A stretch of 64,000 bases of DNA, taken from positions 1-64,000 of the IMG/VR virus record IMGVR_UViG_3300032245_001860. One strand, written 5' to 3'. Below the pieces are notes generated by a model. The model did not search any database and had not been told where the DNA came from. It saw nothing but the letters and a program-made list of their open reading frames with translations. Shown here one piece after another: positions 5,643 through 27,136 of this stretch (positions are counted from its first letter, which is position 1; each line of letters opens with the position of its first letter). The position numbers and the translations under genes are program-made.

Positions 5643-5803
5643 TTTCACTTGGATTGTTTCATGCCTTTCTTACCAAGTGAAAACCAATCCCCCTCTTTCA
5701 GGCAGAGGGGGATTTCCTTATTTATGGGGTTATAATATTATAACCCCAAGATCTTGTTCTAAATAAAATTTGCACAGATTTAATTTATGTGATATAAAAG
5801 GAT

Positions 5804-6295
5804 ATGGAAAACACTACTATTGTTCCCACATTTGAGATTCATGTCCAGTTTAGTTGGAAATATCCCGGCAAGCCTTTTAAAAATATAGTCAAGGATGGCT
5901 ATATTCAATCTATTAATACAGAAGACAAATTGATTGCCGAAGAGTTTATCAATACCTTTGTCAGCAACTATGAGATTGGTATTTGTGAAGTGAAGGATAT
6001 GAAAATTCTATCCATCAAGAGAGTATTTACTTTTGATGAATGGGTGGAGAAATACAAGCCAATTCAGAATCATATAGAAGAATCAAGCACATTTGAGGGC
6101 TATGCTTTCGAGACATATGGTGAAGAGTTTGATTTCGTATGCAATCAATCTCCAGACAAAATTTGGACATTGAGAAACTTAGGTCATCGAGAAGTTATTA
6201 CATTTGGCTTGGGATGGGTTGACAGAGACTTTTATTTTGTCACTGAGAAGCCATGTGAAAAAGAAGATGAATTGAAACAAATCGTTGTGATATAA
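5804..6295 (+). CDS. Hypothetical phage protein
   Basis: 163-aa ORF; ATG 5 nt after TGA-TATAAA -10 box; FETYGEE motif common in phage proteins. Confidence 0.7.
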   Translation: MENTTIVPTFEIHVQFSWKYPGKPFKNIVKDGYIQSINTEDKLIAEEFINTFVSNYEIGICEVKDMKILSIKRVFTFDEWVEKYKPIQNHIEESSTFEGYAFETYGEEFDFVCNQSPDKIWTLRNLGHREVITFGLGWVDRDFYFVTEKPCEKEDELKQIVVI

Positions 6296-6309
6296 TTTGA
6301 GGAAACAAA

Positions 6310-6651
6310 ATGGGACTTGATAATTTTTGGAAGAAGAACCCAGATGAATTTGGTATTGTTAAAGCTAAGTTGAAAGTTTGTGGTTCAATGCTAAATGATG
6401 ATGATGATGAAAACTATTCATTTCGTGGCAAAGTATATTCTAATATAATTCAAGATGTTTCTATGGTTAATCTTTATGATGATATAATACCTCATGAAAC
6501 AGTGAAACAGATAGCAGATGATTTGGAATCTGTAACATTCATTCCAGAGTACATTGTTCATTATGACATTGAAGAAGATGAGTTTATAGACCTTGCCAAG
6601 ATGTTCAGACTCCATGCTGATGCTGGTCATTATCTTGTAAGTAGTTGGTGA
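6310..6651 (+). CDS. Hypothetical phage protein (MGLD...SW type)
   Basis: GAGG RBS; MGLD N-terminus, SFRGKVY motif. Confidence 0.7.
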   Translation: MGLDNFWKKNPDEFGIVKAKLKVCGSMLNDDDDENYSFRGKVYSNIIQDVSMVNLYDDIIPHETVKQIADDLESVTFIPEYIVHYDIEEDEFIDLAKMFRLHADAGHYLVSSW

Positions 6652-6656
6652 AAAAT

Positions 6657-6860
6657 ATGCCCCAAGATACATTAAATTATTTATCTGAAAAAACCGAGCA
6701 TGATTTGTTAGTCATACTTGAAGGATTTCGAATGCTTTTGGCTGATGCTGAATTGTTTGATATGTTAGCTGAAAAGTTAGATTACAATGATGATTGTCTA
6801 ATGGAATTGAGAGATGATGTTCAAAATTATCTTGAAGATGTTCTTGTAGATGTGGTATAA
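6657..6860 (+). CDS. Small acidic hypothetical protein
   Basis: ORF in operon with upstream genes, D/E-rich. Confidence 0.6.
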   Translation: MPQDTLNYLSEKTEHDLLVILEGFRMLLADAELFDMLAEKLDYNDDCLMELRDDVQNYLEDVLVDVV

Positions 6861-6870
6861 TTAGTTTGTT

Positions 6871-6955
6871 GGAGAGGTGGCTGAGTGGTCGATAGCGACT
6901 GTCTTGAAAACAGTTAACGTGAAAGCGTTCGCAGGTTCGAATCCTGTCCTCTCCT
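6871..6955 (+). tRNA. tRNA-Ser(TGA)
   Basis: Acceptor GGAGAGG/CCTCTCC, anticodon arm ACTGT-CTTGAAA-ACAGT, long variable arm AACG-TGAAAG-CGTT, TTCGAAT T-loop. Confidence 0.94.
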
Positions 6956-6968
6956 TTTTTAAAACACC

Positions 6969-7274
6969 ATGACTAAAGAACAAGCAGAAGAAATTAAAAC
7001 AACAATAGATGGTTTTAATAAGCTTTATCATCCTATAACTTTGTCTTTTGATATGTATAGAAATCCAAAAGAAGACCATGATGATAATTGGTTTGTCACT
7101 ATTGTTTATCATGTTACTCCAGATGATTGGTTTACTTTTGTTAGCTTAAGTTTTAATTTTGAAATGGTATCAGATAAGCTTAAAGGATATCAGTTTGCTT
7201 TGGAAGCAGTGCAAGCATATCAAGAAGAATATGGAAATTTAAAATTTTCTCATTCTGGCTTGCCTTTGGGGTAG
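6969..7274 (+). CDS. Hypothetical protein
   Basis: 101-aa ORF between tRNA-Ser and a terminator. Confidence 0.65.
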   Translation: MTKEQAEEIKTTIDGFNKLYHPITLSFDMYRNPKEDHDDNWFVTIVYHVTPDDWFTFVSLSFNFEMVSDKLKGYQFALEAVQAYQEEYGNLKFSHSGLPLG

Positions 7275-7438
7275 GAGTCAATATTGAAACAGAATGAGAG
7301 CTATCCCCCAGTTTAGTAGTGTTTTCTGGGGGATTTTTTATGCATGGGGTTATAATATTATAACCCCAATTCTCTTACTCAAAATAAAATTTGCATTTCA
7401 AGATATTGTGATATAATGAGCCATCAGAGGTAAATACA

Positions 7439-7816
7439 ATGTCGAAATCTATCAATGTTGTTTATATTGAAACTCCACGTCATGGCTATCTCAAGGTAGA
7501 TGGTGATGATGTTCGTGCAAGAAATATCAGTCAATCATTTTCAGACTATTCTTATTATGATGAAGACAATGATATTTTTTATCTTGAAGAAGACCGTGAT
7601 GCTTCAATGTTTTCTAAGCGATGTGAACTTGATGGTGTTACAACAATAGAAACAGATGAATACATGGATTCTGATGAAGAAGCAAAAAATATCCTTTGCC
7701 ATAATGATGCTCTTGGCGGTGATGTGGGATATTTTGGCGAACTTGAACAAAACCATGTAGGATTAGAAAAATTCTTCAGTGACGAAGATGATGATGACGA
7801 AGAAGATGAAGAGTAA
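7439..7816 (+). CDS. Acidic hypothetical phage protein
   Basis: GAGG RBS; TPRHGYLKV and FYLEEDRDA motifs, poly-D/E tail. Confidence 0.7.
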   Translation: MSKSINVVYIETPRHGYLKVDGDDVRARNISQSFSDYSYYDEDNDIFYLEEDRDASMFSKRCELDGVTTIETDEYMDSDEEAKNILCHNDALGGDVGYFGELEQNHVGLEKFFSDEDDDDEEDEE

Positions 7817-7945
7817 AATCTTTTCATTTTTAGAAATGGTGTATTTTATGATTTATTTCCTAATTGCTATCATTGCTGGTATCATACTTTATCCATTGTC
7901 TTTTCTTATTAAAAAAGAGCATTACGAAGAAAGTGGATATGATGT

Positions 7946-8176
7946 ATGAAATATGTGCTTTATGAAGTGACAGAAAATTATGATGTAGTAATCAAATTAT
8001 CTTTTGAGAATCACACATATTTAAATGCTTTTATTGAACAGCATACAACAGAAAAATCATATGAGCCAAAATTTCTTGTATTAGAATTTGATTCAAATGA
8101 TGATATTGAATATCTTTCTGAATATCAAGGAACTGAACAAAAAAGTCGAAAATATGTGGCGAAGATTATAGATTAA
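7946..8176 (+). CDS. Hypothetical protein
   Basis: 76-aa ORF in cassette. Confidence 0.55.
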   Translation: MKYVLYEVTENYDVVIKLSFENHTYLNAFIEQHTTEKSYEPKFLVLEFDSNDDIEYLSEYQGTEQKSRKYVAKIID

Positions 8177-8191
8177 AGGTATTATTAGTTT

Positions 8192-8312
8192 GTTCAAGAT
8201 GTCTTCAGCATCAAGAACAAAATCCAGAAGGTGGTGCTTCTGGAAAACCATGAGAAGGATGTATCTAAACCTCCTTTGCCAGTTCGTATCTCCTTGGTAC
8301 ATTCTTCTCATG
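8192..8312 (+). ncRNA. Putative structured small RNA with CU-rich anti-SD loop
   Basis: Hairpin TCCAGAAG/CTTCTGGA at 8223-8244; 15-bp stem 8249-8312 enclosing CCTCCTT and TCTCCTT. Confidence 0.5.
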
Positions 8313-8315
8313 ATT

Positions 8316-8383
8316 TGGTGGATAGCTTAAGTAGAGCAGAGGAACATAAGCCTTTGATATGGGTGCAAATCCCATTCCACCTT
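8316..8383 (+). tRNA. Degenerate tRNA-like element, CAT anticodon
   Basis: GGTGGA/TCCACC acceptor, ATGGG-TGCAAAT-CCCAT T arm, irregular anticodon arm. Confidence 0.5.
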
Positions 8384-8385
8384 TT

Positions 8386-8458
8386 GGGCGATTAGCTTAA
8401 TGGTTAAAGCAGGGGACTCATAATCCCTTGAGTGGGGGTTCGAGTCCCTCATCGCCCA
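8386..8458 (+). tRNA. tRNA with CAT anticodon (Ile2 likely, or Met)
   Basis: Acceptor GGGCGAT/ATCGCCC, anticodon arm GGGGA-CTCATAA-TCCCT, TTCGAGT T-loop. Confidence 0.92.
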
Positions 8459-9071: not shown

Positions 9072-9230
9072 TTCTAAAGGGGAGAGTAAAATCTCCCCTT
9101 TTTTATTTGTCATGGCAAGCTGGGGTGATAATATTATCACCCCAAAAGAGAACAAATAATTTTAATTTTTTGTACCTAATTCTTTTACCAATCTCTTGCA
9201 AGTTATACTACATTATGTTATTATTAGTCA

Positions 9231-9802: not shown

Positions 9803-10644
9803 TTGACTATAATAGTATTGCAGTTCGCTGTAATACTATTTTTTTATAGGTATGTAATGAAGAAGATTCATATTTCCAATTTCAGGAAGAAGCATGGTGT
9901 AGAGTTGTTTGCACAAGTGTCAGAAGCAGTCAAGAAGTCTAACTGCGATAGTCATGTAATGAAGAATTCCTTTGTAAACATTTCAAAGATTATTCAACAG
10001 CTACCAGAAAATGAAATCAAAACCAAGTTTGTGAATTGGGCCTCAGGTTATGATTTCGCTGTTATTGATGTAGTGTAATTTATTTACAAGATCTTCATGG
10101 GGTGGTAAGATTACCACCCCATTTTTCTATGTCAAATAAATTTTTATGTGATACAATGTGCTATGAACAAACTTATGCATCTTACCAGTGAATTAGATTC
10201 GCACATCAGTATGGTTGATTTTTTTGAAACCCTTGAGAAATGTCATGAGTATGGCAAAGTGATAGTTCAAGACAAGCAAGGACAAAATTATAAAATTCAT
10301 TCTGTACAGGAAGATGACAATCTCAATACTATCTTGATGATAGTACCAGAGTATAATCCAGATGAAGATGAAGATTGGGAAGAATGAAACCTATTACAAT
10401 AAGAAAAACATTAGCCAGATTTGCTTTTTATGCAAGTGAAATTAAATCAGGTAAAGAACATAAGATGATATTGGAATCTATGGATTTTACTGAAGATGAT
10501 TTCCAATATATGATAGAGCAATCATTGAAAATCGCTAACAGTGATGATTATGATTTAGATGTTGTTCTCACTGACCACACGCACAAAAGTCCTATTGGTG
10601 GATGTTATATTTCAAAAGATGGTACCAATCTTGCATGGTTGTAA
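9803..10644 (+). CDS. Three small hypothetical genes (ending 10078, 10387 and 10644)
   Basis: Co-oriented ORFs with sigma70-like promoters; true starts likely downstream of the ORF-track starts. Confidence 0.55.
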
Positions 10645-10664: not shown

Positions 10665-10760
10665 AACGCAGATGACATTCCCCTTTCTTCATCTGCCAGT
10701 GTTGTACAGGTCTGCAACACAACAAAACAGGCAAGAATCCTCCACTTGCCTGTTTTTATT
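10665..10760 (+). ncRNA. Putative three-hairpin small RNA with anti-SD loops
   Basis: Promoter TTGCAT-N16-TATAAA (10631-10658); hairpins GCAGATGA/TCATCTGC (loop CATTCCCCTTTCT), GTGTTG/CAACAC, and terminator AAAACAGGCAAG/CTTGCCTGTTTT (loop AATCCTCCA). Confidence 0.6.
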
Positions 10761-10794
10761 TGACTATTCCAGTATACAACGATATAATGGTTAT

Positions 10795-11190
10795 ATGAAA
10801 ATCGCTATTAGTGCTTTTTCCAATCAAGAAGACTTGACTGCATTTTTTGTCATTGATTGCAGTAACAGTTTGCATTTAGACTTGGAAGATTTTATCTCTA
10901 ATCATAAATCTGAAGAATTTATGTCTTTCAAAACTGATGATGTTTATTTAATTACCGGAACATATCATTATCTGAGAAAAAAAGTAAGTTTTTCTGAAAT
11001 CTTTAAAAATCAATACACAAACAAAGTGACTGATTTCAATTATTCAAAGAAGCAACCTGAATCAATCAAGATTTATGCAAATCGTTTTTTGTGCTATTTT
11101 TATGCTGAAAAAGATGGCATTGTATACCAATCTCATGATATGACAGTAGATATAGTTAAAGATTGGTGCAAGGAGTTAGTAGTTGTCTGA
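10795..11190 (+). CDS. Hypothetical protein (leaderless start)
   Basis: ATG 6 nt after TATAAT (10783-10788); the ORF-track extension to 10648 runs through a terminator. Confidence 0.65.
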   Translation: MKIAISAFSNQEDLTAFFVIDCSNSLHLDLEDFISNHKSEEFMSFKTDDVYLITGTYHYLRKKVSFSEIFKNQYTNKVTDFNYSKKQPESIKIYANRFLCYFYAEKDGIVYQSHDMTVDIVKDWCKELVVV

Positions 11191-13587: not shown

Positions 13588-13917
13588 ATGTGTAAGGAGA
13601 TGGAGATGGAACTTTCGATTCGTGGTATATTGACAGCCAACTTTGAGTTGACAATTGATGAAGCAGATTTTTCTGATGCTTGTGAGAGTGTAGAACTTGA
13701 CCCAGAAAAGTTCAAGAAATTCACTTTCGCACAATGGCAAAAACTCCGTGATGCTTTGATTGACACCACTTGCAACATGGAAAGTGAAATTGACTATGTG
13801 GAAATCCATGAGCAAAACACTGTGTCTGTGGATGAGATTCACATTGATGACACTGACAACATGACCATTGTGACTTATCAACATGATGGTAAAGTAGATT
13901 CAGTAGATATCCAATAA
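13588..13917 (+). CDS. Acidic hypothetical protein
   Basis: AAGGAG RBS, D/E-rich, followed by terminator. Confidence 0.65.
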   Translation: MCKEMEMELSIRGILTANFELTIDEADFSDACESVELDPEKFKKFTFAQWQKLRDALIDTTCNMESEIDYVEIHEQNTVSVDEIHIDDTDNMTIVTYQHDGKVDSVDIQ

Positions 13918-14198: not shown

Positions 14199-14813
14199 TT
14201 ACCCACCCTCTTTTATAAAATCTTTTGAAATTACTTGATTGAACTTTCTTGGGTCATACCAGAAACATCCAAAACAAGTACCAAGATAGTTTTCGTTACC
14301 TGTAATCCAACCAGCAGAATAACCTAATCTTCTTGCATCATACCTTTTGTTTGTTTGTTCGCAGATATTACAATGTGTTCTTTTTGTATCATTGCAAGTT
14401 TTGTGTAAAGGTTGAAAATCATCTTCTTTTTGTTTGCTGATGTCTTCGTAAGTCTCAGGTGAATATCTACCATCCTTATGGTCACATTCTATTCGAGCGG
14501 CAGAATCTACAATTCTACATCTTTGTTTTTTTATGGATTTTCTAATATCACTTCGTATATTAGATTCTTTAGATTTATCTACAAAGCCATCAAGTTTTAT
14601 TGCAGTAAGTTTTCCACCAACAATAGTTTTTCTCAAAACATAGTCTTTGAGAGGCCCTCTGTCATCTTGTGCCCAACTACCATTTGTTGTATGGAAACTT
14701 ACACCAAAGTGATTCTGCAACTCTTCGAATGTTATCCATTCAGTTATTCCATCAACAGGCTTCGCATATTCAAAAAACATACGACCATATTCTGCTGGTT
14801 TTAGATTAGCCAT
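14199..14813 (-). CDS. HNH-type restriction endonuclease, NlaIII/IceA family
   Basis: IECDHKDGR, DFQPLHKTCNDTKR.HC..C, RYDA and C.GCFWYDP match the IceA1/R.NlaIII pattern; overlaps the MTase stop codon. Confidence 0.75.
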   Translation of the reverse strand: MANLKPAEYGRMFFEYAKPVDGITEWITFEELQNHFGVSFHTTNGSWAQDDRGPLKDYVLRKTIVGGKLTAIKLDGFVDKSKESNIRSDIRKSIKKQRCRIVDSAARIECDHKDGRYSPETYEDISKQKEDDFQPLHKTCNDTKRTHCNICEQTNKRYDARRLGYSAGWITGNENYLGTCFGCFWYDPRKFNQVISKDFIKEGG

Positions 14814-15510
14814 TTAGTTTACCGATTCTTTCTGTTGCTTTTGTAAAGTATGTTTCGTCCAACTCACAGCCAATGAATTTACGTTTGGTGTTATGACAAG
14901 CCACAGCACAAGAAGCAGAGCCAGCAAAACAATCCAAAACTAAATCACCTTCATTGGAATGTTTAGTAATTAAAGCTTGAAGTAGATTGAGAGGCTTTTG
15001 GGTAGGATGGAATCTATCTCTTTCATGACAGATTGCAAATTCATATATACCCTTATCATATTCGGAATGAAATGTTGGTTTCGAGCCTTTGATTGCAGTG
15101 AGAGCAATTTCTCTTGAATTAGTGAGGTAATTGATTTTCGAATTGATTGGAACTGGATTTGTCTTGACCCATTCTATAAATCTCAACTGCTTAAACTTAG
15201 CATCTTCAATCCATTTTTTAAGTGTTTCAATTTTCCAAAGGTCATAGAAACAAATAATCGTTCCACCGGGTTTTAGAATGCGATAACATTCTTCCATTAC
15301 CTTATCAAGAGCAAAAATCTCATTGTCCCATTCTCCAAACTCGTAGGACATTTTGAATCTTTCCACACCTTTTTCACCACAAGATTCAAAACCTGTAGGG
15401 CGAGAAATTGTATATGGTGGGTCAATCAAAACAAGATTGACACTTTTATCTTCTACTGTTGGCAAAAAATCCAAACAAGATTGATTTACCAGAGATATGT
15501 TTTCATTCAT
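14806..15510 (-). CDS. Beta-class N6-adenine/N4-cytosine DNA methyltransferase
   Basis: IDPPY, HPTQKP and VLDCFAGS motifs in beta order. Confidence 0.93.
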   Translation of the reverse strand: MNENISLVNQSCLDFLPTVEDKSVNLVLIDPPYTISRPTGFESCGEKGVERFKMSYEFGEWDNEIFALDKVMEECYRILKPGGTIICFYDLWKIETLKKWIEDAKFKQLRFIEWVKTNPVPINSKINYLTNSREIALTAIKGSKPTFHSEYDKGIYEFAICHERDRFHPTQKPLNLLQALITKHSNEGDLVLDCFAGSASCAVACHNTKRKFIGCELDETYFTKATERIGKLNG

Positions 15511-15588
15511 AATGAATTATACCATACGATATAGGATGCAAGAAATTAATTTTTTTATTTGACATCTGATCTTGGGGTGATAATATTA

Positions 15589-17120: not shown

Positions 17121-17275
17121 ATTACAAACCTCCAAGCATAATAATACCACAATATACCACTGTAGACAAATATTATTTATGGGGTGATAATATTATCACC
17201 CCAAGCTGAGTAAATAAAGTAAATTCCATTATGACATATGTGATATAATTGGATATCAAAGACTGGGAGAATCAA

Positions 17276-17488
17276 ATGGATAAAAGGATGGAAGTTATCA
17301 TCTTACAAAAAGGTATGACACAAAAAGAGATAGCAGAGAGAGTGGGAGTACATCAACCCAAAGTTTCAGAATGGCTTAGAGGAGTAAGAATTCCAAATTC
17401 GAAGTTATTATATAAACTTGCTGAAGTCTTAGAAGAAGAACCAGCAGTGTTAGTAGATAAGTTAAAGCAAATATCAGAGTTAGAATAG
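17276..17488 (+). CDS. XRE-family HTH transcriptional regulator (paralogue, divergent)
   Basis: GMTQKEIAERVGVHQPKVSEWLRGVRIPN; GGGAG RBS. Confidence 0.88.
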   Translation: MDKRMEVIILQKGMTQKEIAERVGVHQPKVSEWLRGVRIPNSKLLYKLAEVLEEEPAVLVDKLKQISELE

Positions 17489-17517
17489 AAAATCCCCCAG
17501 AAATGGGGGATTTTAGT

Positions 17518-17829
17518 TTAGTCCATGATTACGCTGAGTCTGTCTTCTTTTGTCTTTATATGACCAGAAAACCAGCCATTTTTAGAAGGCTCAATCTCAG
17601 ACACAGATTCAACCAGATTCAATTGGTGCTTGTACACCTCTTCAAGTGATACAATCTGCTGTTGGATGTTTTCTGCTATTGCTTTGTTTATTGCAAGCAT
17701 CTCAATCTTGATATCTTGAAGAGCGACAATCTGATTGCGAGTTGACAAAAGAATCTCACGAAGCCTGTCCGAATTTTTAGTAGTTCTCATAACTACCTCC
17801 TTATGATAGAAGTATATCACAATATACAA
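17518..17829 (-). CDS. Hypothetical coiled-coil protein (start likely MRTTKN)
   Basis: AAGGAGG RBS. Confidence 0.6.
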   Translation of the reverse strand: MYIVIYFYHKEVVMRTTKNSDRLREILLSTRNQIVALQDIKIEMLAINKAIAENIQQQIVSLEEVYKHQLNLVESVSEIEPSKNGWFSGHIKTKEDRLSVIMD

Positions 17830-17955
17830 GCCTCACCACTAAATTAATAATTTATTTTTGTATTGAATCTGGGGTTATAATATTATAACCCCAAGAGCTA
17901 TTATGCAAATAAAAAAATATCCCTTGACTTTCGTCAAGGGATATGGTTGTGGAGT

Positions 17956-18156
17956 TTAGTAATCGTCTCCGTCATAACCACCATAGTCTTCATCGGTTCC
18001 GAAACCAGCAGAAGCCAATGCATCAGCATCCATCCAAGATTCATCCTCATAAGGCTCATCGCATTCCTGTTCTTCAAAGTCCTCTTCCCAATCTCTTGGG
18101 TCGAGGTCAACGCTTGGGAAAATTCTTGCTTCCAGTTCTGCTTCAGTGTAATCCAT
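17956..18156 (-). CDS. Very acidic 66-aa protein
   Basis: AAGGAG RBS; MDYTEAELE...DADALASAGFGTDEDY. Confidence 0.7.
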   Translation of the reverse strand: MDYTEAELEARIFPSVDLDPRDWEEDFEEQECDEPYEDESWMDADALASAGFGTDEDYGGYDGDDY

Positions 18157-18187
18157 CTCTATCTCCTTACTCCTAAAGTATACCACA

Positions 18188-18538
18188 TTATACTGAGGTG
18201 TCAACTGTATCCCAGCCAGCTGGAGCACCTTTCTTCCAATCAATTTCTTTTGTATCATTCCAAGTTGCAGGGCAATTAGATTCTACGAATAAAGCAAAGT
18301 CTGATGCCTCTTCGTCATCTCTAAGGTAATATACTACCGCTTCGTAGTATGACCCGTAATCGCTACCATCTTCACGCTTAATGCCAAACCAAGCACCTTC
18401 AGGAACATTAAGAAATATGTCCTTGAGCATCTGTACATACTTGCGAACCTCTGCTACATGAGCAGAATAATCATGCATATCCACACATTCTTCTTCGCAT
18501 GGGTTTGGTCCAAGGTAAAACCAGTTCTTTTTATCCAT
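18188..18538 (-). CDS. Hypothetical phage protein (leaderless start)
   Basis: LGPNPCEEEC and DYGSYYEAVVYY motifs; TATACT-N6-ATG. Confidence 0.7.
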   Translation of the reverse strand: MDKKNWFYLGPNPCEEECVDMHDYSAHVAEVRKYVQMLKDIFLNVPEGAWFGIKREDGSDYGSYYEAVVYYLRDDEEASDFALFVESNCPATWNDTKEIDWKKGAPAGWDTVDTSV

Positions 18539-18625
18539 GACGTAAGTATACCATAATATACTACCTGTTCAAGAAAAATTAATTTATTTGACAAAATTAT
18601 TTGGGGTGATTTTTATATCACCCCA

Positions 18626-18706
18626 AAAAAAGCCCAGCAATAAATTACTGAGCTTTTTCTGAAGGAGTTTGAAATGAATAACAAGTTGAAAATGAAAGGT
18701 TCAACA
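18626..18706 (-). ncRNA. Putative small antisense RNA complementary to an RBS+AUG
   Basis: TTGACA-N16-TATACT promoter (18739-18712), no sense ORF, terminator at 18626-18658; complementary to GAAGGAGTTTGAAATG. Confidence 0.6.
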
Positions 18707-18761
18707 TGTTAAGTATACCTGTTTTTCAAATAATGTCAAGGGGAATTTCTTCCCCTTGTTT

Positions 18762-19100
18762 TTAGTTTAATTTAGATGATTGGCAAATTATGCATTTACC
18801 AATAATGCCTACCTCATCAGTACCGTATGCCTCACGGTACATATTGGTGGCAATCATATTCACTACAGGATATGCTCTAAGCAATGCCTCTTCGTCGCAA
18901 ATAAGAATCAAGTCATCCTTAAGATTTACCACTTGGATAAGTTCACAACCTAATGCTTCGTATAGGGAATCAAGCGTAAACTCACCCTTGTATTCATAAA
19001 CGTCACGACTTGGCGTGATAACAAATGACTTGCCAGATTTAATCTGGTCAAGCATCACATTCAAAGCCAACACTGGAAGTCCAATCATCGTATACCTCAC
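18762..19100 (-). CDS. DUF3846-like protein
   Basis: LYEALGCELIQVV, LICDEEALL..PVVN.IAT and IIGKCII motifs. Confidence 0.65.
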   Translation of the reverse strand: MRYTMIGLPVLALNVMLDQIKSGKSFVITPSRDVYEYKGEFTLDSLYEALGCELIQVVNLKDDLILICDEEALLRAYPVVNMIATNMYREAYGTDEVGIIGKCIICQSSKLN

Positions 19101-19198
19101 TTACAGAATAAGTATACCAGATTATATCAGCGATGCAAATTTATTTAATTATTTGACAAAAGGATCTGGGGTGATAATATTATCACCCCAAGGTACAG

Positions 19199-19981
19199 TT
19201 AATAACCGTACCAAGGAATAATTTTTTCTGAAAAAACAAAGAGCTGGACTTCATCATTGACTACTTTATATCTCATAATGCAATAATTACTACCACATTG
19301 ACAAAAAGGCGCCCAAGCATTCCATCCTAAACAATCAGGCAGACAGGCATCACTCTCAAAGTGATGCCATTTCTCTTCAGCCAAAAGTTCAGAATATTTC
19401 TTGAGAAATTCATGGCGGTAAGTTCTCAAATTATCCCTCAACAATTTCTACATGGTCTTTGAGTCTGAACACTGGATATTCACACCAACCTGATTGATGT
19501 GATTTGCCTGTGTCTTCAAAATGTCCAGAATTCAAAACTTCTTCTTTCATGGAGCCAGCATCATTACTGTTAAAATGAAACTCTCTTGGCTCAATGTCTG
19601 TGTCTGGAAGGTTAGCTGAGATTTTTACAAGTGGCATACCATCTTGAAACAATTGGATGCCGACATGACCATTGGTATATCTACCAATCTTTGCAGTAGC
19701 CCAACCATATCTTGTAATGAGTTCAATTTTTTGCATTATACTAACTGCTCCATGTTTTCTTTTGCTCTGTTAAAGATAGTATACCAGTCAATAGTAGCCC
19801 ATGCAGAATAAAACATATCCCTGCCATATAAATTCATGTCTTCTGGTTTGCAAAAATCTTTAATCTGAAACTTAATAAATTCTTCGCTATTTCCTTTATT
19901 CAACATCTCAACAATTGTTTCCATATGAAGGACATTGACAGACCAAGTAGCCTGATTCTTCCAGCCGTTGTAATCGCTCAT
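19199..19981 (-). CDS. Three-gene cassette: 19736-19981 (YNGWKN.ATW protein), 19431-19736 (DUF4313-like) and 19199-19444 (Cys-rich)
   Basis: Coupled ORFs; DUF4313-like Y.NG..GIQL..ISANLP...SGWCEYP motif. Confidence 0.6.
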
Positions 19982-20114
19982 AGGAAAAGTATATCATAAT
20001 ATACCAACGATGCTACAAATATTTAATTATTTGACAAATTATTTTGGGGTGGTAATAATACCACCCCAATTTGATGATGATAAATAAAAAAGAGGGAGCT
20101 TTTGCTCCCTTTCA

Positions 20115-20267
20115 CTACTTTTTTTTCCGCTCTTCTTTTTTCTCTTGGAAACAATCTTCACAGGCTCCCTACCACCTGTTAGTCTCCTCCCATCTCCAAC
20201 ATCTACCTTCACCTGCTCCAACATAGCAAGCACAATAACAACATTGTTTTCCATACTTGTTTTTCAT
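20115..20267 (-). pseudogene. Zn-ribbon small protein interrupted by an in-frame TAG at 20169-20171
   Basis: GGAGG RBS; MKNKYGKQCCYCACYVGAGEGRCWRWEETNRW*GACEDCFQEKKEERKKK. Confidence 0.6.
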
Positions 20268-20322
20268 AACTACCTCCAAAGTAAATATACCAGTATATAC
20301 TTCAGATGTCAAGAAAATTTAT

Positions 20323-21919
20323 CTACTTTGCGTAATCTATGCTTTGGAATGTTGACTGCTTGAACATATCTGCTATCTTGTATGCCTCTGAAAGAAATGC
20401 ATAGATAGCACTTGAAAGAACCAAAAAACTACTTTGGTCATATGTCAGGTCTTTTGGCAAGATTTGATAGCACTGTTCATTTCCATTATTGAGAAATGTA
20501 TAAACTGTGCCTGAAATCTGCAATTTTTGTTTATTATATTGAACTTGAATTTGTCCAACATCATGAGTAATGACTAATACTAAATCTTGAGTGGCAAAAG
20601 AATCTATTGATTCTTTAACAAATGTTTCAGAGTCATAAATAAACTTTGCATTATTACTGTAAATCATTAGATTACTCTTCTCTTTTCATTCTCATCAGCG
20701 TTACTTATCATACAGCACAAAAAATAATAAAACAATACTGCAAAACAAGCAAGCATACCATTACTAAACAACCAGTATGCGGTTTTGCCATCACCTGTAA
20801 AAATCCACTCAAACAAACCATACACCAATGAAAGAGGAGTGGCACAAGCAAGAATGGTAAGAATGTTTTTCAATACTTTCAGACCTGTTGTGGTGTAAAG
20901 TCTCATATGGGCAAAAAAGACAAGCAATCCGCCACCCCAAACCACAACATACAATAATCTATTAACCATATCTAAAGTCATCCTGCTACCTCCCAATTTT
21001 CTGCCATTACATCTTCTGTCTTCAGAGTATAATATGCCCAATTAACTACATCACCATTTGAAAAAATAATCTTGAATTTCAATCGCTCATTTTCTAACTT
21101 GACAAATAGAATTGTGCTTTTATGTTCATATGGTTTTGTTCTTGTGATTGTTTGACCATCACGTAATGCTGGTAATACCTGTTCAAGTTTCATGATTAGA
21201 GTATACCATAGTATACTATCGTTGCAACAAAAATTAATTTATTTGACAAGATTATTTGGGGTGGTATTATTACCACCCCAAAAAGAAAACCCCAAGATAA
21301 ATTTCCTGGGGTTTTATATTATGCTTCTACGTTTACATACTTGGCTTCGGGATACCAGTGTTGAACCATCAGGACAGCTTCTTTTGGTTCCTGATCATCA
21401 AGATTATTTACAAAGTCTTTCAACAATGTAAAAAACTTGTATCTGGAAACCAATGTCAATGAAGTGTTTTCATCACCTGTAGTGAACTTTTCCAAAAACT
21501 GTTCCTGTTCATCATCACCCAATTCAATACTTTCAAAGATATATGAAGCATTCCAATAACCAACAGTTTCAACCGCCATTATTTCACCTCAACTTTCTTT
21601 GACAACATTCCAAATGCGATAGACAACAACGCCAAAGTTACAAGCACAGACATTACAATACTATCCATTACTTTGCCTCCTCTGCAAACGGGTCACCAAT
21701 CTCATCCTGTTCATCAAAAGCCTTGCCAATCGCTTCCAACTCTGCATCAAGTTTTGCAAGGTCTTCGGTAATCCAAGCCAACCTTTGTTCTGGTGTTGCA
21801 ATCTCGACTGAAAGAGAGGCTGAAACTTGGCACTTGAATGCCGTCTTTGCTACTTCACACTTGATAATGTAATCTTGATATGTCATCTCTATCCCCTTAC
21901 ACTTAGAAGTATACCACAA
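20323..21919 (-). CDS. Small hypothetical genes (20323-20667, 20667-~20981 membrane protein, 20978-21193, 21319-21579, 21668-~21886)
   Basis: Coupled minus-strand ORFs inside palindrome-delimited cassettes. Confidence 0.55.
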
Positions 21920-21994
21920 TATACTACCATTGCAAGAAAAATTAATTTATTTGACAAAATACTTTGGGGTGATATCAATATCACCCCAAATAAC

Positions 21995-22330
21995 AAATAA
22001 ACCCCCAAGAAAATTCTTAGGGGGTTTATTTGATGGTTACACTATAGAGGATTGATTTGTGGTTAGCTGGACTTCAACCAGTACGGAACACAAGGGCAGT
22101 TCTTTCGATGGTCTCTGCCTCCGATGTTATCCTTGTCCTTAAAGGAGCATGATACCCAACCACAAATCATTATACTTGGAGATATTGTTTGCGTCAATAG
22201 TCTCCAAGGTTTCAGTAAAAGATTGTGGACTAAACCACTCCAAGGTTGCTACCCTTATTTGGACTACGCAATTAGTCCGAGCCGTTCTGGTCTTTTACTG
22301 GATGAAGGTTGCTAATTACTTCAACCTTAC
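21995..22330 (-). ncRNA. Putative ~335-nt multi-stem non-coding RNA
   Basis: TTGACA-N17-TATTAT promoter (22365-22337), at least five helices, terminator at 21995-22031. Confidence 0.6.
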
Positions 22331-22797
22331 TTTGTTATAATACTGGAATAATCTTCGTTTGTCAAGGAGTAGACTGGAAGAAATTCCTTAACTAATTTCC
22401 ATCCTTGTTCTTCATGGGCAAAATCTAAGACCCACCATTGACCACCAGAATAAAGATAATAAAAGTCAGCCATAGTAGAATAGAAAGGTTTCATCCATTC
22501 ATCCAGTGAGACAACCTCAGCAATGACTTCTGATGAATCCTCTCCACGGTCTCTGCCATATGCTACACATACATAGGCTTGAGGCTTATCGAAAGAATGC
22601 TCACCTGTAGGATTGAGATTTTGAGCCAATTGTGAAAGGTCACCAAGCTCTAAGAGTGCATCAATATTTTCTTCAGTGTTATAATACTCTACAAGAGTTT
22701 CACCTACACCACCCTCAATATATCCATCCCAATGACAATAAATTTGTTTGATTGTGCCATCAGGTAACATTTTGCCGATTCTTGAATTGGTTGCCAT
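22327..22797 (-). CDS. Conserved phage protein (MATxSRIG...IYCHWDGY family)
   Basis: IYCHWDGY, LLELGDLS.L and AYGRDRGE motifs. Confidence 0.75.
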   Translation of the reverse strand: MATNSRIGKMLPDGTIKQIYCHWDGYIEGGVGETLVEYYNTEENIDALLELGDLSQLAQNLNPTGEHSFDKPQAYVCVAYGRDRGEDSSEVIAEVVSLDEWMKPFYSTMADFYYLYSGGQWWVLDFAHEEQGWKLVKEFLPVYSLTNEDYSSIITK

Positions 22798-22824
22798 GAT
22801 TGTTCTCCGTTATATTATATCAGG

Positions 22825-24043
22825 TTATTTCCACATATTTTTAGGCTTGGTAGACCTTTCACCGGGCATATAGAATTTCTTAATCTTATTCTTGTTGTAT
22901 GTCCAGCGTCCAACCAATTCGCCTAAGGGATTTTCATCAGTAGCCTTGTAAATAGCAAAATACCAGCCTTCAAGCGCATATTTCTTTGCTGTTTCCTTAG
23001 CCTGAATCAAAGTGGTGCAAGGCGTTAAAGATTTGGTTTTATCCCAAGTTTCGCCGATAACGATTCTGTATAGTGTCATAGGTTAAGTATATCAGTTTAT
23101 ATCAAAAATGCAAGGAAAATTATTTTATTTGACATAAAAAAATGGGGTGGTTTTTATACCACCCCAAAATCCTGCCAACAATATAAATTATTAGCAGGAT
23201 AGAACTTTTTTCTAATTTACTCCAGTTTCCAGTCTGACGGAATATGATTTGTTTTTAGCCCATTGCATTCCAAACAAATCAAAAATTCCAATTACTAATA
23301 ACGCAATATGCCATTCTTCAAACTGACTATGAATATCAACTACACTGCCAAAAGTAAATTTGGTGTTTTCATAAAAGATTGAAAACATCAGAGCTGCAAC
23401 AAAAACCTGAACATACAAACATAACTTTTCATAACTCTTTAACTTCATAACTTTTCTCCTACACAGGTAGTATACCACAATATACTACCTGTGTTAATTA
23501 ATTTTAAGGAAGATTTGCGACAAAGTCACTCAGGAAGGAATCGTAATTTCTTTTAGAGTTATCCTTAAGAATACGCTCTATGGTCATGCGACTTTCGAGT
23601 AATTTGTAATGGGAATCATTGTTTTGTTTTTCGATGAGTTTTTCGATGGATTCTTTAAGCTCTTCTGACTTAACATAGAATGAAGCATCAATATCATCCA
23701 GTGTTGCGATAAAGTCTTCAGCAACCAAACCACCATGTTGAGATTTCTTGCCATGAGAGAGACGAGCAACCTCAGTAACAGGAACAAGCATCCAATCAAT
23801 CTTAGAATCAAGTGTGCCAATTCCAAGCAGATGAATTGCCATGTTGATAGTTTCCATCTGATTGAAGTTTTGCACAGAACTGTTAAGGTCAGTTACAGAA
23901 ACTTTCAATTGATAATCTTCACCATTGTAAACAAAATATTTAATCTTGTTCTTGATAATAAGAGAGTCACCCAAAATTTCTTTGAGCGATTCAAGACCAT
24001 AAGTGTTAATGCTTCGGTTTTTCATAACTGGATTGTATCTCAC
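22825..24043 (-). CDS. Hypothetical genes (22825-23079, 23212-~23448 membrane protein, 23504-~24025)
   Basis: Each has its own extended -10 promoter. Confidence 0.55.
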
Positions 24044-24061
24044 TTTATATCAGAGCGCAAG

Positions 24062-24113
24062 AAAAAAAGACCAGATATTTCTACCTGGTCTGAATGAAAG
24101 ACAAACTATGAGC
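24062..24113 (-). ncRNA. Putative ~50-nt antisense RNA complementary to an RBS+AUG
   Basis: TTGCAT-N16-TATAAT extended promoter (24147-24120); complementary to GAATGAAAGACAAACTATG; terminator AGACCAG/CTGGTCT. Confidence 0.55.
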
Positions 24114-24254
24114 ACACTTATTATATCAAAATATATTTATCATGCAAATTAATTTATTTCTTTATTCTGGGGTTATAATATTATAACCCCATGAGCTGTT
24201 TCGCAAATAAAAAAATATCCCTTGACAAGTGCCAAGGGATGTGATAGTGGAGTT

Positions 24255-24851
24255 TTAGTCTTTGAAGCGGTCTGCGTTGGTCTCGATGACTCGCTTGGCT
24301 TCCGCTACCGTCATGAGGTCAATCAATGCTTTTTCAATGACCTTTTCCATCTGTTCAATTTCAAAGTCACCATTCTTTGTGTAGATGGCGTTTGTGCCGT
24401 ATCGGGTTGTATTGAATCCGACATTGTTCTTGAAATTGTTTACCACAATATGGAAATTGCGGATGAGGTCTTCGTACACTTCATCATTGTTTGAGGAGAT
24501 GAAGGTAAGGTGCGTAAAGTGTTGATTCTTGCGGTCACGGGTATTCTCATACCAGTAATTCTTGTGGAACCACTTGCGAGATGCGTCTGAACCCTTCTCG
24601 GCATGAATGCGGGTAACCAAGAGAATTGGCGTACCATTGTAAGAGAACAAGTAATCGCCAGTATGCTTGAAATCTAAAATACCCAAGCCACCATCAAACA
24701 TATCTGCGGTAATCTTGTTTGTGCCTGTGAGAAGGCTGTTAAGTTCATTGTACTTTGTTACCAGTACGCTGTTGACAACAAACAAGCTATCTTGTTGAGC
24801 CTGAGATTGAGGGGTTGTTGCACCGTGAGAACCAATTTGAATACCTTGCAT
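24255..24851 (-). CDS. Hypothetical protein
   Basis: 198 aa, AAGGAGG RBS, sole gene of its cassette. Confidence 0.7.
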   Translation of the reverse strand: MQGIQIGSHGATTPQSQAQQDSLFVVNSVLVTKYNELNSLLTGTNKITADMFDGGLGILDFKHTGDYLFSYNGTPILLVTRIHAEKGSDASRKWFHKNYWYENTRDRKNQHFTHLTFISSNNDEVYEDLIRNFHIVVNNFKNNVGFNTTRYGTNAIYTKNGDFEIEQMEKVIEKALIDLMTVAEAKRVIETNADRFKD

Positions 24852-25071
24852 CGTATTCCTCCTTGTTGATAGTATACCACATTATCAACCCTGTGCAAGA
24901 AAAAACTTTTTATTTGACAGGTGATTTTTGGGGTGGTACAACTACCACCCCAATCCAGGCTTTGTAAATAAAAAAATATTTTTTATTTTTTCTTGACAAA
25001 AACCTGGAAAGATGGTAGCTGAAAAATATATTAAAGCATCCCTTGACTTTCATCAAGGGATGTGGTGCAGG

Positions 25072-25952
25072 TCAGGCGCATACCTCACGTTTGCGCAGAA
25101 CATTAACCAATCTGCTGTTTTCCGCTTCAATGTCACCTCTTGAGATAAGGTTCTTAATTGCATTCTCAGGCGTATCATCGCACAGGTTAGAATGAATCTC
25201 AAGAGTGTTACCGAAACTGTAAAGGTATTGAATTGGGAAGCGATACAGTTGATTGTGTACACGCTCTCGCATTGAATCAGAGAAAGGTTGATAATACATA
25301 CGGTCTTCCTTGCCGTTTCCAAGTTTGGCATATGCCATTGCCTTTCCAACGGATTGAAAGAACTCCAAAGCCCAAAGGAAGGTATCGACAATGCCTTCAT
25401 ATGCAAAGACATACAGTTCGCTTGAATTCCAAGCGCAGGCAATACAATCCTGCCCGTTGGCTGTTCGACCTACAAAGAGAGACTTGACCGACGATGATTG
25501 GAAATTCTTGATTTCCCAGAGGTGCATAGTGTTTTCCATGGCTTAAATATACCACCTTATACCAGCAGTTCGCAAGTAATTAGGTGTGAAAAAATACACT
25601 AAAAATAAATTTGACAAACTGAAAAAAGTGTGATAGAAAAATATTTAATTTGACATTTTTTCTGGGGTGGTATTTGTACCACCCCAATTGAGGCTTTGCA
25701 AAATAAAAAAATAAATTTAAAAATCCCTTGACATCTGCCAAGGGATATGGTAGCTGTCTACTCTGCGTAGATTTTTAGTTGATTGGTTTCAGGAATAAAC
25801 CTTGTTTCAAATTCATCATTGTTGATGAAATCTGCAATTTTTGCATTGAATTCTTCTTCGGTCATACCTTCTGTGTAACCAAGGTCAGACATGGAGAGTT
25901 CCCAGAATCGATTGGTAGAAAAGGTGAGTTCTACTTGTGTATCTTTGTTCAT
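25072..25952 (-). CDS. Two single-gene cassettes (25072-25539 and 25758-25952)
   Basis: Leaderless-type starts, ATCCCTTGAC-type terminators. Confidence 0.6.
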
Positions 25953-26965
25953 GTCTATATATTACAGTATAAAGTGGTATGATGTCAAATTTATTAATGT
26001 AAGAATTAATAACTAATTAGCCCTTGCATCTGATTATATAAAGTGGTATATTATGTACATGAACGATATGTACCGACCAACAGCCTACGTCATCGAAGCC
26101 GGTATGCAAAAAGCATATGTGCTAATCCTCCACAGAATCATCAAGAACAGCATCAAGAATAAATTTGTTCTTGCTGAAGCAGACCGCATACTTGAAGAAT
26201 CAAACACTGCCTATGAACGTGCAAAGGCTAAAGCAATAGAGATGTAGGCTCTATCATATAACCAGAGTTTTGTCAAGTAAAAAATTATTTTATTTGATAA
26301 AACTTTGGGGTGGTTTGTGTACCACCCCAAAACCCCTAATGCAATATAAATTTTACATTAGGGGTTTTTATTTACTAAGGGTAAAGTATGTAACCTACTA
26401 AACCATAACGACGTAGACAATGTGTAATTCCTGCCATGGAATTCGTTGTTGCCAATAGCTCACCATTTGGGTGATATAACTCATACAGCATATTTCTGTA
26501 TTTGACTGTGCCTGTTTTCATAACAGGCACATTATATCATTTTAGAATGTTACTTGGCAACAATTCCCCTTTGTGTATAGAATTTACTTCCATCATTGAG
26601 AATCCACTCTGTGTTATATTGGCGAGCATACTTCTCACCCAGTTCTTGTGCATTGCTACCAGATGCAAGCAACAATCCATTCCGGAATGCAGAGAATTTC
26701 ATCTTTGGCATATTGGTGACAAAGGTAACAATAATCTTGTCTGTAGTGTTCATGTCAATAGTATACCACAATATACTATCTAAACAAATTAAATTAACTT
26801 GCTGTGGATCCATTGCAATCGTTATATAAGATGGTATACTTACTCTATGAACATAATCATCTCCATCATCGGCATCATCTTGAGTGCTATTCTATTGCTG
26901 GGTACTATCACAATCAACAAAGAAAAGTAATTTGCAAAGTCTATATAAGGTGGTATACTTAACCT

Positions 26966-27136
26966 ATGAACGAAAACGATGACCCAATGTTTACAATGTT
27001 CGTCTCCCAAGCCCTTCAGGAACTTGCCAAACAAAAGCCTGATGTGTCGCAAGAAGACCTCTACGAAGAGGCTATTGAACTTGCATACGAGCGATGGGAT
27101 TCCTACTGCGAATCACAATACTTTCAGGGAGAGTAA
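26966..27136 (+). CDS. Small acidic 56-aa protein (not in ORF track)
   Basis: TGG-TATACT-N6-ATG; MNENDDPMF...YFQGE. Confidence 0.55.
   Translation: MNENDDPMFTMFVSQALQELAKQKPDVSQEDLYEEAIELAYERWDSYCESQYFQGE

What the first reader, a model, noticed from the sequence alone, without database searches (positions are those of the whole stretch)
5793..27136. Widespread leaderless phage mRNAs
Seen: ATG lies 5-6 nt after a -10 box, usually with no room for an SD, at 5804, 10795, 13178, 15510, 18538, 19981, 21193, 23079, 25539 and 26966, and also at 49963 and 60053. Inference: these messages start at or next to the AUG and would be immune to the anti-SD RNAs encoded in the same region. That would give a translation-takeover logic together with the tRNAs and the ArfA-like factor. 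Other phage genes do have SD sequences, so any shut-off would be selective.
Basis: partly seen in the sequence, partly recalled or inferred. Interest (0 to 1): 0.6.

Follow-up and report, generated by a model that had tools for sequence, protein, structure and literature searches.

The report
Leaderless genes in freshwater jumbo phage
About a third of the early genes of this uncultivated 316-kb freshwater phage, plus some late genes such as the portal gene, start exactly where their promoter should start transcription, so their messages probably have no ribosome-binding leader; relatives keep this layout, the likely host group has it too, and nothing supports the proposed "translation takeover".

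Summary
All 12 listed ATGs sit 5-7 nt after a sigma70-type -10 box, usually TGnTATAMT with a -35 TTGCA/TTGACA 16-18 bp upstream. I found five more in the window. Genome-wide, 33 ORF-opening ATGs lie 5-7 nt after a scored promoter where 5.4 are expected (P about 1e-15). GTG, TTG and control codons show no such peak.

Relatives keep the spacing to the nucleotide while the intervening bases change freely, and the base before the ATG is always a pyrimidine (58 of 58 junctions). A distant 358-kb relative has 17 such starts in 80 kb. The portal gene has GGTATAAT+7 nt+ATG in all 35 relatives examined.

The promoters belong to PeSL-like cassettes (hairpin, A/T-rich block, promoter). These same cassettes also drive genes with short Shine-Dalgarno (SD) leaders, and some orthologues switch between the two forms. 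Leaderless mRNAs are therefore well supported, but no transcription start was mapped.

The takeover reading is not supported. ArfA, S21, IF3, RegA and RegB profiles find nothing. Anti-SD motifs are not enriched. Two thirds of the early genes use an SD. The probable host phylum (Armatimonadota, tentative) also carries -10 boxes next to its ORFs. This is a new variant of a known kind.

The parts
5770..6295 (+). Promoter (TTGCAC, 17 bp, TGaTATAAA) + 5 nt + ATG 5804; 163-aa ORF
   Evidence: relatives keep d=5 (one at d=6) with discriminators aggat/aagat/agtat/acaggt
10129..10387 (+).
   Evidence: the orthologue in L060 has TACAAT + 6 nt + ATG
10760..11190 (+). TTGACT, 17 bp, TATAAT + 6 nt + ATG 10795; 131-aa ORF; a hairpin lies upstream, so the longer TTG-10648 frame is not the gene
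   Evidence: discriminators ggttat/gtaaat/ggaagc, all 6 nt; d=8 in a homologue of 40-43% identity
13143..13450 (+). TTGACA, 17 bp, TATCAT + 6 nt + ATG 13178; 90-aa ORF
14806..15545 (-). Cassette TGGTATAAT + 5 nt + ATG 15510; 234-aa N6/N4 DNA methyltransferase
   Evidence: Pfam N6_N4_Mtase matches from residue 24. Orthologues of 89-91% identity in L120 and G001 are SD-led instead.
18188..18572 (-). Cassette TTGAAC, 16 bp, TGGTATACT + 6 nt + ATG 18538; 116-aa ORF
   Evidence: discriminators tacgtc/acaatc/tgtgct/aatctc, always 6 nt; SD-led in G001
19736..20016 (-). Cassette TGaTATACT + 6 nt + ATG 19981; 81-aa ORF
   Evidence: 8 distinct discriminators, all 6 nt
20978..21227 (-). Cassette TTGCAA, 16 bp, TGGTATACT + 6 nt + ATG 21193; 71-aa ORF
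   Evidence: ctaatc/ttgcat/ttttct/tactct/ctatct, all 6 nt
22825..23113 (-). Cassette TTGCAT, 16 bp, TGaTATACT + 6 nt + ATG 23079; 84-aa ORF
   Evidence: 6 discriminators, all 6 nt
25072..25575 (-). TTGCGA, 18 bp, TGGTATATT + 6 nt + ATG 25539; 155-aa ORF
25758..25987 (-).
26024..26247 (+).
26550..26787 (-).
26932..27136 (+). TTGCAA, 16 bp, TGGTATACT + 6 nt + ATG 26966; 56-aa ORF. Its length is conserved at 55-56 aa, so this frame is the gene, not the 106-aa frame from 26979.
27314..27477 (-).
49927..50820 (+). TGGTATAAT (weak -35) + 7 nt + ATG 49963; 285-aa kinase-like protein (weak APH match)
59289..60090 (-). TGGTATAAT (weak -35) + 7 nt + ATG 60053; 254-aa N6/N4 DNA methyltransferase
   Evidence: the Pfam domain matches from residue 21
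1131..1236 (+). Internal control: the same hairpin and promoter cassette with a 19-nt SD leader (gattGAGGaaaccact) before the rIIA ATG at 1234. Similar leadered cassettes lie before 3411, 13588, 16033(-), 19088(-), 21886(-) and 24851(-).

Best explanation
The window is the first 64 kb of an uncultivated freshwater jumbo phage of 316 kb and 33% GC, estimated 88% complete. Its early region (about 4.6-28.4 kb) is an array of small transcription units built from a repeated cassette. The cassette consists of a GGGGTG..CACCCC hairpin, the block TGTCAAATAA plus A/T-rich sequence, a -35 TTGCA, 16-18 bp of spacer, and an extended -10 TGnTATAMT. This is a host sigma70-type promoter, similar to the PeSL elements of T4-type phages.

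In roughly half of these promoters the ATG lies 6 nt (range 5-7) after the -10. Transcription should then begin on the A of the AUG, with a pyrimidine at -1. The resulting mRNA has no 5' leader and would be translated by the 5'-AUG-dependent, SD-independent route. In the other promoters a 15-24-nt leader carries a strong SD (TGTAAGGAG).

A second promoter class, GTATAAT without a -35, puts some replication and structural genes in the same geometry, including the portal gene and a helicase. Two phage-encoded sigma factors may read this class.

Shown by the sequence: the geometry, its statistical excess, its restriction to ATG, and its conservation across a phage family. Inferred: the exact transcription start, leaderless translation, and early timing. 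The most economical reading is that the phage follows the expression grammar of a leaderless-competent host, probably Armatimonadota. It gains compact regulatory modules that can be swapped between genes. It is not a discriminating takeover device.
For: 1. Complete promoter anatomy at every site.
2. A sharp peak of ORF-opening ATGs at d=6-7: 33 observed against 5.4 expected, P about 1e-15, and only for ATG.
3. 61 distinct orthologous junctions in relatives, down to about 40% protein identity. Nearly all keep d=6 (or 5) while the discriminator takes about 45 different sequences. The -1 base is C or T in 58 of 58.
4. The leaders of SD-led orthologues vary in length (20, 21, 23 nt), so only the leaderless spacing is constrained.
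5. The distant relative G001 (rIIA 37% identical) has 17 ATGs at d=6 in 80 kb, against about 1 at other distances.
6. The portal gene has GGTATAAT + 7 nt + ATG in all 35 IMG/VR relatives (66-97% identical), although the DNA further upstream cannot be aligned.
7. The same cassettes place an SD 8-12 nt after the -10 in leadered genes. This fixes the transcription start to the position that the ATG occupies in the others.
8. Two of the leaderless genes are DNA methyltransferases whose Pfam domain needs that N-terminus.
9. ORF lengths and the ATG are conserved in relatives.
Against: No 5'-end data exist. The one RNA library that holds the phage (X20) is stored as contigs. Two of its contigs run across promoters (18426-18596; 21200-21989). 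Read-through transcripts or contaminating DNA are therefore present, and some copies of these genes may sit inside longer RNAs. Most of the upstream hairpins lack a U-tract, so they may not terminate well. The host is not cultured and its assignment is indirect. My gene calls and promoter scores are home-made.
Confidence: 0.75

Rival explanations
1. One reading: the leaderless messages form a privileged class that escapes a phage-imposed block of SD-dependent initiation by anti-SD RNAs. Phage tRNAs and an ArfA-like factor help, giving a selective translation takeover.
For: Both leaderless and SD-led genes exist in the phage. Two ORF-free promoter-terminator units each contain one CUCCUU: about 18625-18705(-) and 22000-22332(-). 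A takeover that favours leaderless mRNA was proposed for Thermus phage phiYS40 (PMC3594737).
Against: Anti-SD hexamers are not enriched. No ArfA, S21, IF3, RegB or RegA homologue is detected. The tRNA-CAU is not an initiator. Most early genes, including rIIA and rIIB, depend on an SD from the same promoters. Orthologues flip between the two modes. Genes read from host-type promoters must be translated by unmodified host ribosomes. The likely host phylum itself shows the leaderless geometry.
Confidence: 0.07
2. The TATAAT-like boxes are not the promoters of these genes. Transcripts start further upstream, by read-through or from other promoters. The A/T-rich box next to the ATG acts as an SD-independent translation enhancer, or is simply a sequence preference.
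For: Contigs from the RNA library span two of the promoters. Most upstream hairpins lack a U-tract. About a third of the phage genes have neither an SD nor a -10 box.
Against: A -35 lies at 16-18 bp and TGn is present. The spacing is held to 1 nt, whereas a translational enhancer would tolerate shifts. The -1 base is always a pyrimidine. The peak is limited to ATG. The identical cassettes serve as promoters for SD-led genes.
Confidence: 0.12
3. It is a chance by-product of an A/T-rich genome, in which TATAAT-like words and ATGs are common.
For: The genome is 33% GC. 126 promoter-like sites are found in 20 kb against 82 in shuffles, so many consensus hits are noise.
Against: The peak is confined to d=5-7, to ATG and to ORF-opening codons, with P about 1e-15. 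It is conserved in relatives and in a distant relative.
Confidence: 0.01

Closest known systems
PeSL (promoter-early stem-loop) cassettes of T4-type phages (Arbiol et al. 2010, PMC2839356; Comeau et al. 2014, PMC4122927)
   Same: Both have a stem-loop just upstream of a sigma70-like early promoter with an A/T-rich block before the -35. Both are repeated many times among small ORFs of unknown function in a plastic region next to rIIA/rIIB. Both are linked to gene replacement between close relatives: an RNA-library contig diverges exactly at the end of the -10 at 21200, and L005/L027 carry a chimeric junction in which tacgtcATGGAT precedes the 19981 gene, the sequence that heads the 18538 gene in the window phage.
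   Different: Published PeSLs end in an SD plus start codon (PMC4122927). Here about half of the cassettes omit the leader and fuse the start codon to the predicted transcription start. The phage has a DnaE-type polymerase and no close cultured relative, so it is not shown to be a T4-type phage.
Leaderless middle/late transcripts of Thermus phages phiYS40 and P23-45. For phiYS40 the source is PMC3594737, citing Sevostyanova et al. 2007. For P23-45 the source is my recollection of Berdygulova et al. 2011, which I did not check.
   Same: In both, many phage genes have the -10 placed so that the mRNA begins at the AUG. The host phylum (Deinococcus-Thermus) itself has about 30% of its ORFs with an adjacent -10 (PMC12340547). 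A -35-less class with an extended -10 exists.
   Different: There the leaderless class is middle/late and forms the majority. Here it is most dense among genes with full host-type (-35 plus -10) promoters, and it coexists with strong SD leaders on the same promoter cassettes. The phage is a 316-kb, 33% GC freshwater phage with a different probable host phylum.
Classical single leaderless phage mRNAs (lambda cI from PRM; Shean and Gottesman 1992, cited in PMC12340547)
   Same: A 5'-terminal AUG, no SD, and a sigma70 promoter.
   Different: Those are single regulatory genes. Here the count is at least 15 in 24 kb and about 30-40 in the whole genome.
Jumbo phages with mapped TSSs (phiKZ, PMC8244752; AR9, PMC5312081)
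   Same: Large genomes with many early promoters.
   Different: phiKZ has no leaderless transcript, with UTRs mostly 31-40 nt. AR9 has UTRs of 26-491 nt. Both use their own RNA polymerases, whereas the early promoters here are host sigma70-type.

Membership tests
Bacterial leaderless mRNA | Transcription start at, or within a few nt of, the start codon | not testable with these tools
   Only contigs of one metatranscriptome are available, and no read 5' ends can be seen.
Bacterial leaderless mRNA | Promoter -10 element about 5-8 nt upstream of the start codon | tested here: met
   d=5-7 at all 17 window sites; the genome-wide peak has P about 1e-15.
Bacterial leaderless mRNA | 5'-terminal AUG (other start codons poorly tolerated) and no SD | tested here: met
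   Only ATG peaks at d=6-7; GTG and TTG are flat. No SD is found for these starts.
Bacterial leaderless mRNA | The AUG is the real N-terminus | tested here: met
   The ATG and the ORF length are conserved in relatives. The methyltransferase domains begin at residues 21-24. No proteomic evidence is available.
PeSL cassette (T4-type phages) | Stem-loop immediately upstream of a sigma70-like early promoter with an A/T-rich upstream block, repeated in a region of small variable ORFs | tested here: met
   29 hairpin + TGTCAAATAA units occur in the genome, all in the first 28 kb. 50 terminator-like hairpins are found against 10 expected.
PeSL cassette (T4-type phages) | SD and start codon at the 3' end of the element | tested here: not met
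   This holds for about 8 cassettes (d=17-24 with an SD). It fails for at least 6 hairpin-linked cassettes and 9 further promoters, where the ATG lies at d=5-6.
PeSL cassette (T4-type phages) | Breakpoints of gene replacement between close relatives fall in the element | tested here: inconclusive
   One contig diverges at the 3' edge of the -10 at 21200. One chimeric promoter/first-codon junction is seen in L005 and L027. No systematic synteny analysis was done.
phiYS40-type leaderless programme with translational takeover | Change in the host IF2/IF3 balance, or a phage factor that favours leaderless initiation | tested here: not met
   No IF3_C, S21, ArfA, RegA or RegB profile hit in the phage genome. 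Host factor levels cannot be tested.
   No match at E<=1 in six frames of the 316-kb genome. The profile is short, so a very divergent homologue could be missed.

The most novel reading that the evidence does not exclude
Within one promoter cassette family the phage keeps two interchangeable translation modes: AUG at the transcription start, or a short strong-SD leader. It may use them as a two-tier programme. After infection a phage factor or the abundant ORF-free RNAs would shift ribosome preference, so that the two classes are translated at different times or levels. If so, these freshwater jumbo phages and their Armatimonadota hosts would be a natural system for studying competition between leaderless and SD-led initiation.
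Probability: 0.12. Interest if true: 0.7.

Novelty: new variant of a known kind. Interest (0 to 1): 0.45.

Why it matters
Leaderless mRNAs are usually treated as rare exceptions, or as a trait of Actinobacteria, Deinococcus-Thermus and archaea. Here a whole family of abundant freshwater jumbo phages shows the architecture, held to single-nucleotide precision. It sits side by side with SD-led genes on the same promoter cassettes, and orthologues flip between the two modes.

This has three practical consequences. First, start-codon and promoter annotation in such metagenomic phages should allow for leaderless starts. Several of the true genes here are short, or are hidden by longer alternative frames. 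Second, it extends the PeSL idea of mobile regulatory cassettes to a leaderless form. Third, it points to Armatimonadota as a phylum that uses leaderless initiation. It does not provide evidence for a new takeover mechanism.

Tried and rejected
- Near-identity search of 5793-27136 against GenBank phages found nothing. Protein searches with rIIA and the DnaE-like polymerase found only relatives of 35% identity or less, so no cultured relative helps.
- The DNA-pattern scans of IMG/VR and of the metagenome collection returned mostly chance single hits. Only loci that also carried the full hairpin and motif were used.
- Read laying on 17200-23150 with the one RNA run and three DNA runs gave contigs only, with no starts or ends (table 6 empty), so no TSS evidence either way.
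- Rfam found only tRNAs at gathering threshold, and only sub-threshold noise near 22 kb.
- The Bacteroidota-type -7 motif TAnnTTTG is not enriched upstream of genes, so a Bacteroidota host was rejected.
- Profile searches for ArfA, S21, IF3_C, RegB and RegA were all negative.
- A search for CRISPR spacers, using 20 kb of the phage against 401 Armatimonadota genomes, returned only tRNA matches among the matches listed. No other phylum was searched as a control, so the tRNA-Lys identity is only weak host evidence.
- An SD signal could not be resolved in the Armatimonas sample, because start sites are ambiguous at 57% GC. I draw no conclusion about SD use by the host.
- The big protein searches, structure prediction and complex prediction were not used, because the question did not depend on them.


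Full report
**What the window is.** The 64-kb window is the first fifth of a single 315,852-bp virus record of 33% GC (CheckV estimate 88% complete). It encodes rIIA (1234-3219) and rIIB (3411-4613). Outside the window it encodes a DnaE-like polymerase, terminase, portal, a protease-like giant protein, both topoisomerase II subunits and a helicase. It has no near relative among GenBank phages. Runs from ten freshwater metagenome studies hold it or close relatives. It is therefore an uncultivated freshwater jumbo phage.

**The observation.** I printed the 60 nt before each of the 12 listed ATGs. Each has a -10 hexamer, most often as an extended -10 TG(G/A)TATA(C/A)T. In most a -35 TTGCA/TTGAC lies 16-18 bp upstream; at 15510, 49963 and 60053 the -35 is weak. 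The ATG follows after 5 nt (5804, 15510), 6 nt (eight sites) or 7 nt (49963, 60053). None leaves room for an SD.

A promoter score (-35, -10, TG bonus) finds 338 sites in the genome. Counting ORF-opening ATGs (at least 40 codons) by distance d after the -10 gives 4, 20 and 9 at d = 5, 6 and 7, against 1.8 per distance elsewhere (P = 9e-16). A second, broad hump at d=15-23 corresponds to short SD leaders. GTG, TTG and four control codons show no peak. Gene calls made from coding potential alone give the same result.

In the early region (4.6-28.4 kb) about 15 genes are in leaderless geometry. About 21 have an SD of at least 5 nt and about 11 a weaker one.

**Anatomy.** The early promoters belong to a repeated cassette. 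It runs: hairpin (T)GGGGTG(A/G)TA-loop-TA(T/C)CACCCC(A), about 8 nt, TGTCAAATAA, A/T-rich sequence, -35 TTGCA, spacer, TGGTATACT. The spacer often holds a second TATA-like word that forms a dyad with the -10 (AGTATA-N6-TATACT).

After the -10 comes one of two things. Either 6 nt and the ATG, or a leader of 15-24 nt carrying TGTAAGGAG-type SDs. The leadered form is found before rIIA, rIIB and the genes starting at 13588, 16033, 19088, 21886 and 24851. Because the SD in leadered cassettes begins 8-12 nt after the -10, transcription must start about 7 nt after the -10. In the other cassettes that is exactly where the A of the ATG lies. The region has 50 terminator-like hairpins against 10 expected.

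This is the architecture described as PeSL in T4-type phages. Those elements end in an SD and a start codon (PMC4122927; PMC2839356).

**Comparative evidence.** Pattern scans of IMG/VR and of the metagenome collection recovered about 20 contigs from relatives that carry the cassettes. For 14 of the window's 15 early-region sites, orthologous junctions could be compared.

- 61 distinct junctions were found, down to about 40% protein identity.
- Nearly all keep d=6 (or 5), while the discriminator takes about 45 different sequences. For 21193 these are ctaatc, ttgcat, ttttct, tactct and ctatct.
- The base at -1 is C or T in 58 of 58. From established knowledge of sigma70 start-site choice, a pyrimidine at -1 and a purine at +1 are preferred.
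- Leaders of SD-led orthologues vary in length (20, 21 or 23 nt for the 21886 gene).

A distant relative, G001 (358 kb; portal 68% and rIIA 37% identical), has 17 ORF-opening ATGs at d=6 in 80 kb around its rIIA, against about 1 at other distances. These include orthologues of the window genes with new discriminators.

The portal gene (genome position 130575) has GGTATAAT + 7 nt + ATG in all 35 IMG/VR relatives (66-97% identical). The DNA further upstream cannot be aligned and has no -35. This points to a second, -35-less promoter class. Similar GTATAAT + 6-7 nt + ATG junctions precede a helicase (208458) and other genes. The phage encodes two sigma70-family proteins that might read this class.

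Some orthologues have switched mode. The 15510 methyltransferase is SD-led in L120 and G001 at 89-91% protein identity. The 18538 gene is SD-led in G001. The two designs therefore appear to be functionally interchangeable.

**Expression data.** The only RNA run that holds the phage is a freshwater metatranscriptome kept as contigs. Laid on 17200-23150, it shows contigs that cross two promoters (18426-18596; 21200-21989). No read starts can be seen. This neither maps a TSS nor excludes read-through or DNA carry-over. The leaderless inference therefore rests on sequence and comparison.

**The takeover interpretation.**
- CCTCC and CTCCTT are not enriched.
- Profile searches of all six frames of the genome find no ArfA, S21, IF3_C, RegB or RegA.
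- The tRNA-CAU has a paired G1:C72, so it is not a bacterial initiator.
- The other tRNAs (Leu-TAA, Lys-TTT, Ser-TGA) read A/T-ending codons.
- Most early genes, on the same promoters, depend on an SD.

I found two ORF-free promoter-terminator units that each contain one CUCCUU: about 18625-18705(-) and 22000-22332(-). Nothing else links them to SD masking.

**Host.** The gene at 48181-49116 encodes a prepilin-type N-methylation motif plus DUF1559. Its GC is 44%, above the phage average. All 80 of its best genome matches are Armatimonadota. It is 87% identical to a freshwater MAG contig of 51% GC, and 70% identical to a gene on a 190-kb Armatimonas contig. The phage tRNA-Lys is 95-97% identical to tRNA-Lys genes in several Armatimonadota genomes, but I ran no control phylum. 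The host assignment is tentative.

In 400 kb of the Armatimonas MAG, TATAAT-like boxes peak 6-7 nt before ATG or GTG codons that open long ORFs:
- With at least 5 of 6 matches and ORFs of at least 100 codons: 12 and 19, against about 4.
- Per long ORF (at least 150 codons): about 8% excess.
- 18 clear examples are listed.

A Fimbriimonadales genome shows an excess of about 12% at d=6-10. If this phylum is the host, the host itself uses leaderless or near-leaderless starts.

**Comparison with the literature.** Widespread leaderless phage transcripts, and the idea that a phage tilts initiation towards them, are known from Thermus phage phiYS40 (PMC3594737). Its host phylum has about 30% of its ORFs next to a -10 (PMC12340547). 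The two jumbo phages with TSS maps have no leaderless mRNAs (PMC8244752, PMC5312081).

The present case is a new variant in three respects. The cassettes are PeSL-like but have the AUG at the predicted transcription start. The phage family is a freshwater jumbo family with a probable Armatimonadota host. Leaderless and SD-led designs are mixed and interconvertible.

**Verdict.** 'Leaderless' is well supported but not mapped. The takeover logic is not supported. Interest is moderate.

Noticed in passing
window 22000-22332, minus strand: An ORF-free unit between a sigma70-like promoter (TTGACA 22365-22360, 17 bp, TATTAT 22342-22337) and a terminator hairpin (22023-22002). It folds at -104 kcal/mol, z=-5.0. 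It matches no Rfam family. Contig depth in the metatranscriptome is 104-124 here, against 13 or less elsewhere in 17200-23150. It is a candidate structured phage RNA of about 320 nt.
   Followed up: partly
window about 18625-18705, minus strand: A strong promoter (TTGACA, 16 bp, TATACT; 18739-18712) is followed by about 80 nt without a real ORF, and then by a U-tract terminator and the cassette hairpin. It contains one CUCCUU (18667-18662).
   Followed up: partly
window 48181-49116 (+): A prepilin-type N-methylation motif plus a DUF1559 protein, at 44% GC in a 33% GC phage. It is 87% and 70% identical to Armatimonadota chromosomal genes, and all 80 best genome hits are Armatimonadota. This is a host lead and a probable recent gene capture.
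   Followed up: partly
L275-L294 (G006:C3:1-400000) and L300-L319 (G009:C1:1000001-1400000): Armatimonadota genomes show TATAAT-like boxes 6-7 nt (G006) or 6-10 nt (G009) before ATG or GTG codons that open long ORFs, in roughly 8-12% of long ORFs. The phylum seems to use leaderless mRNAs widely.
   Followed up: partly
early promoters, e.g. window 18545-18562, 21200-21217, 26760-26777: The promoter spacer carries a second TATA-like word one helical turn upstream of the -10, often forming a dyad AGTATA-N6-TATACT. It is conserved in the distant relative G001. It may be an operator or a second RNA polymerase contact.
   Followed up: no
G000:C1:111022-111186 (+) and 311507-311650 (-): Two phage genes with a sigma70 region 2 domain, at 34 and 33 bits. 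They are candidates for reading the -35-less GTATAAT promoters of the portal, helicase and other genes.
   Followed up: no
window 56680(+), 61724-62626(-); genome 104747(-), 115344(-), 130051, 147687, 240331, 242036(-): Eight genes begin with ATGTGG followed by TACAAA, TATAGA, TACAGA or AACTAC (MWYK, MWYR or MWNY). They look like a dispersed paralogue family or a shared N-terminal module. The member at 61724-62626 has NUDIX and HAD_SAK_2 domains.
   Followed up: no
window 8316-8383 (+): A fifth tRNA-like sequence found by Rfam (39 bits) but not called by ARAGORN, directly before the tRNA-CAU.
   Followed up: no
window 50771-55513 (+): A low-GC block of sugar-modification genes: NAD-dependent epimerase/dehydratase, WavE-like, C-methyltransferase and FkbM methyltransferase. 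It lies just downstream of the leaderless kinase-like gene at 49963.
   Followed up: no
window 21200 and relatives L005/L027: Signs of cassette-mediated shuffling. A contig of a relative matches up to the 3' edge of the -10 at 21200 and then continues into a different, SD-led gene. In L005 and L027 the 19981 orthologue carries the discriminator and first two codons (tacgtcATGGAT) that head the 18538 gene in the window phage.
   Followed up: partly
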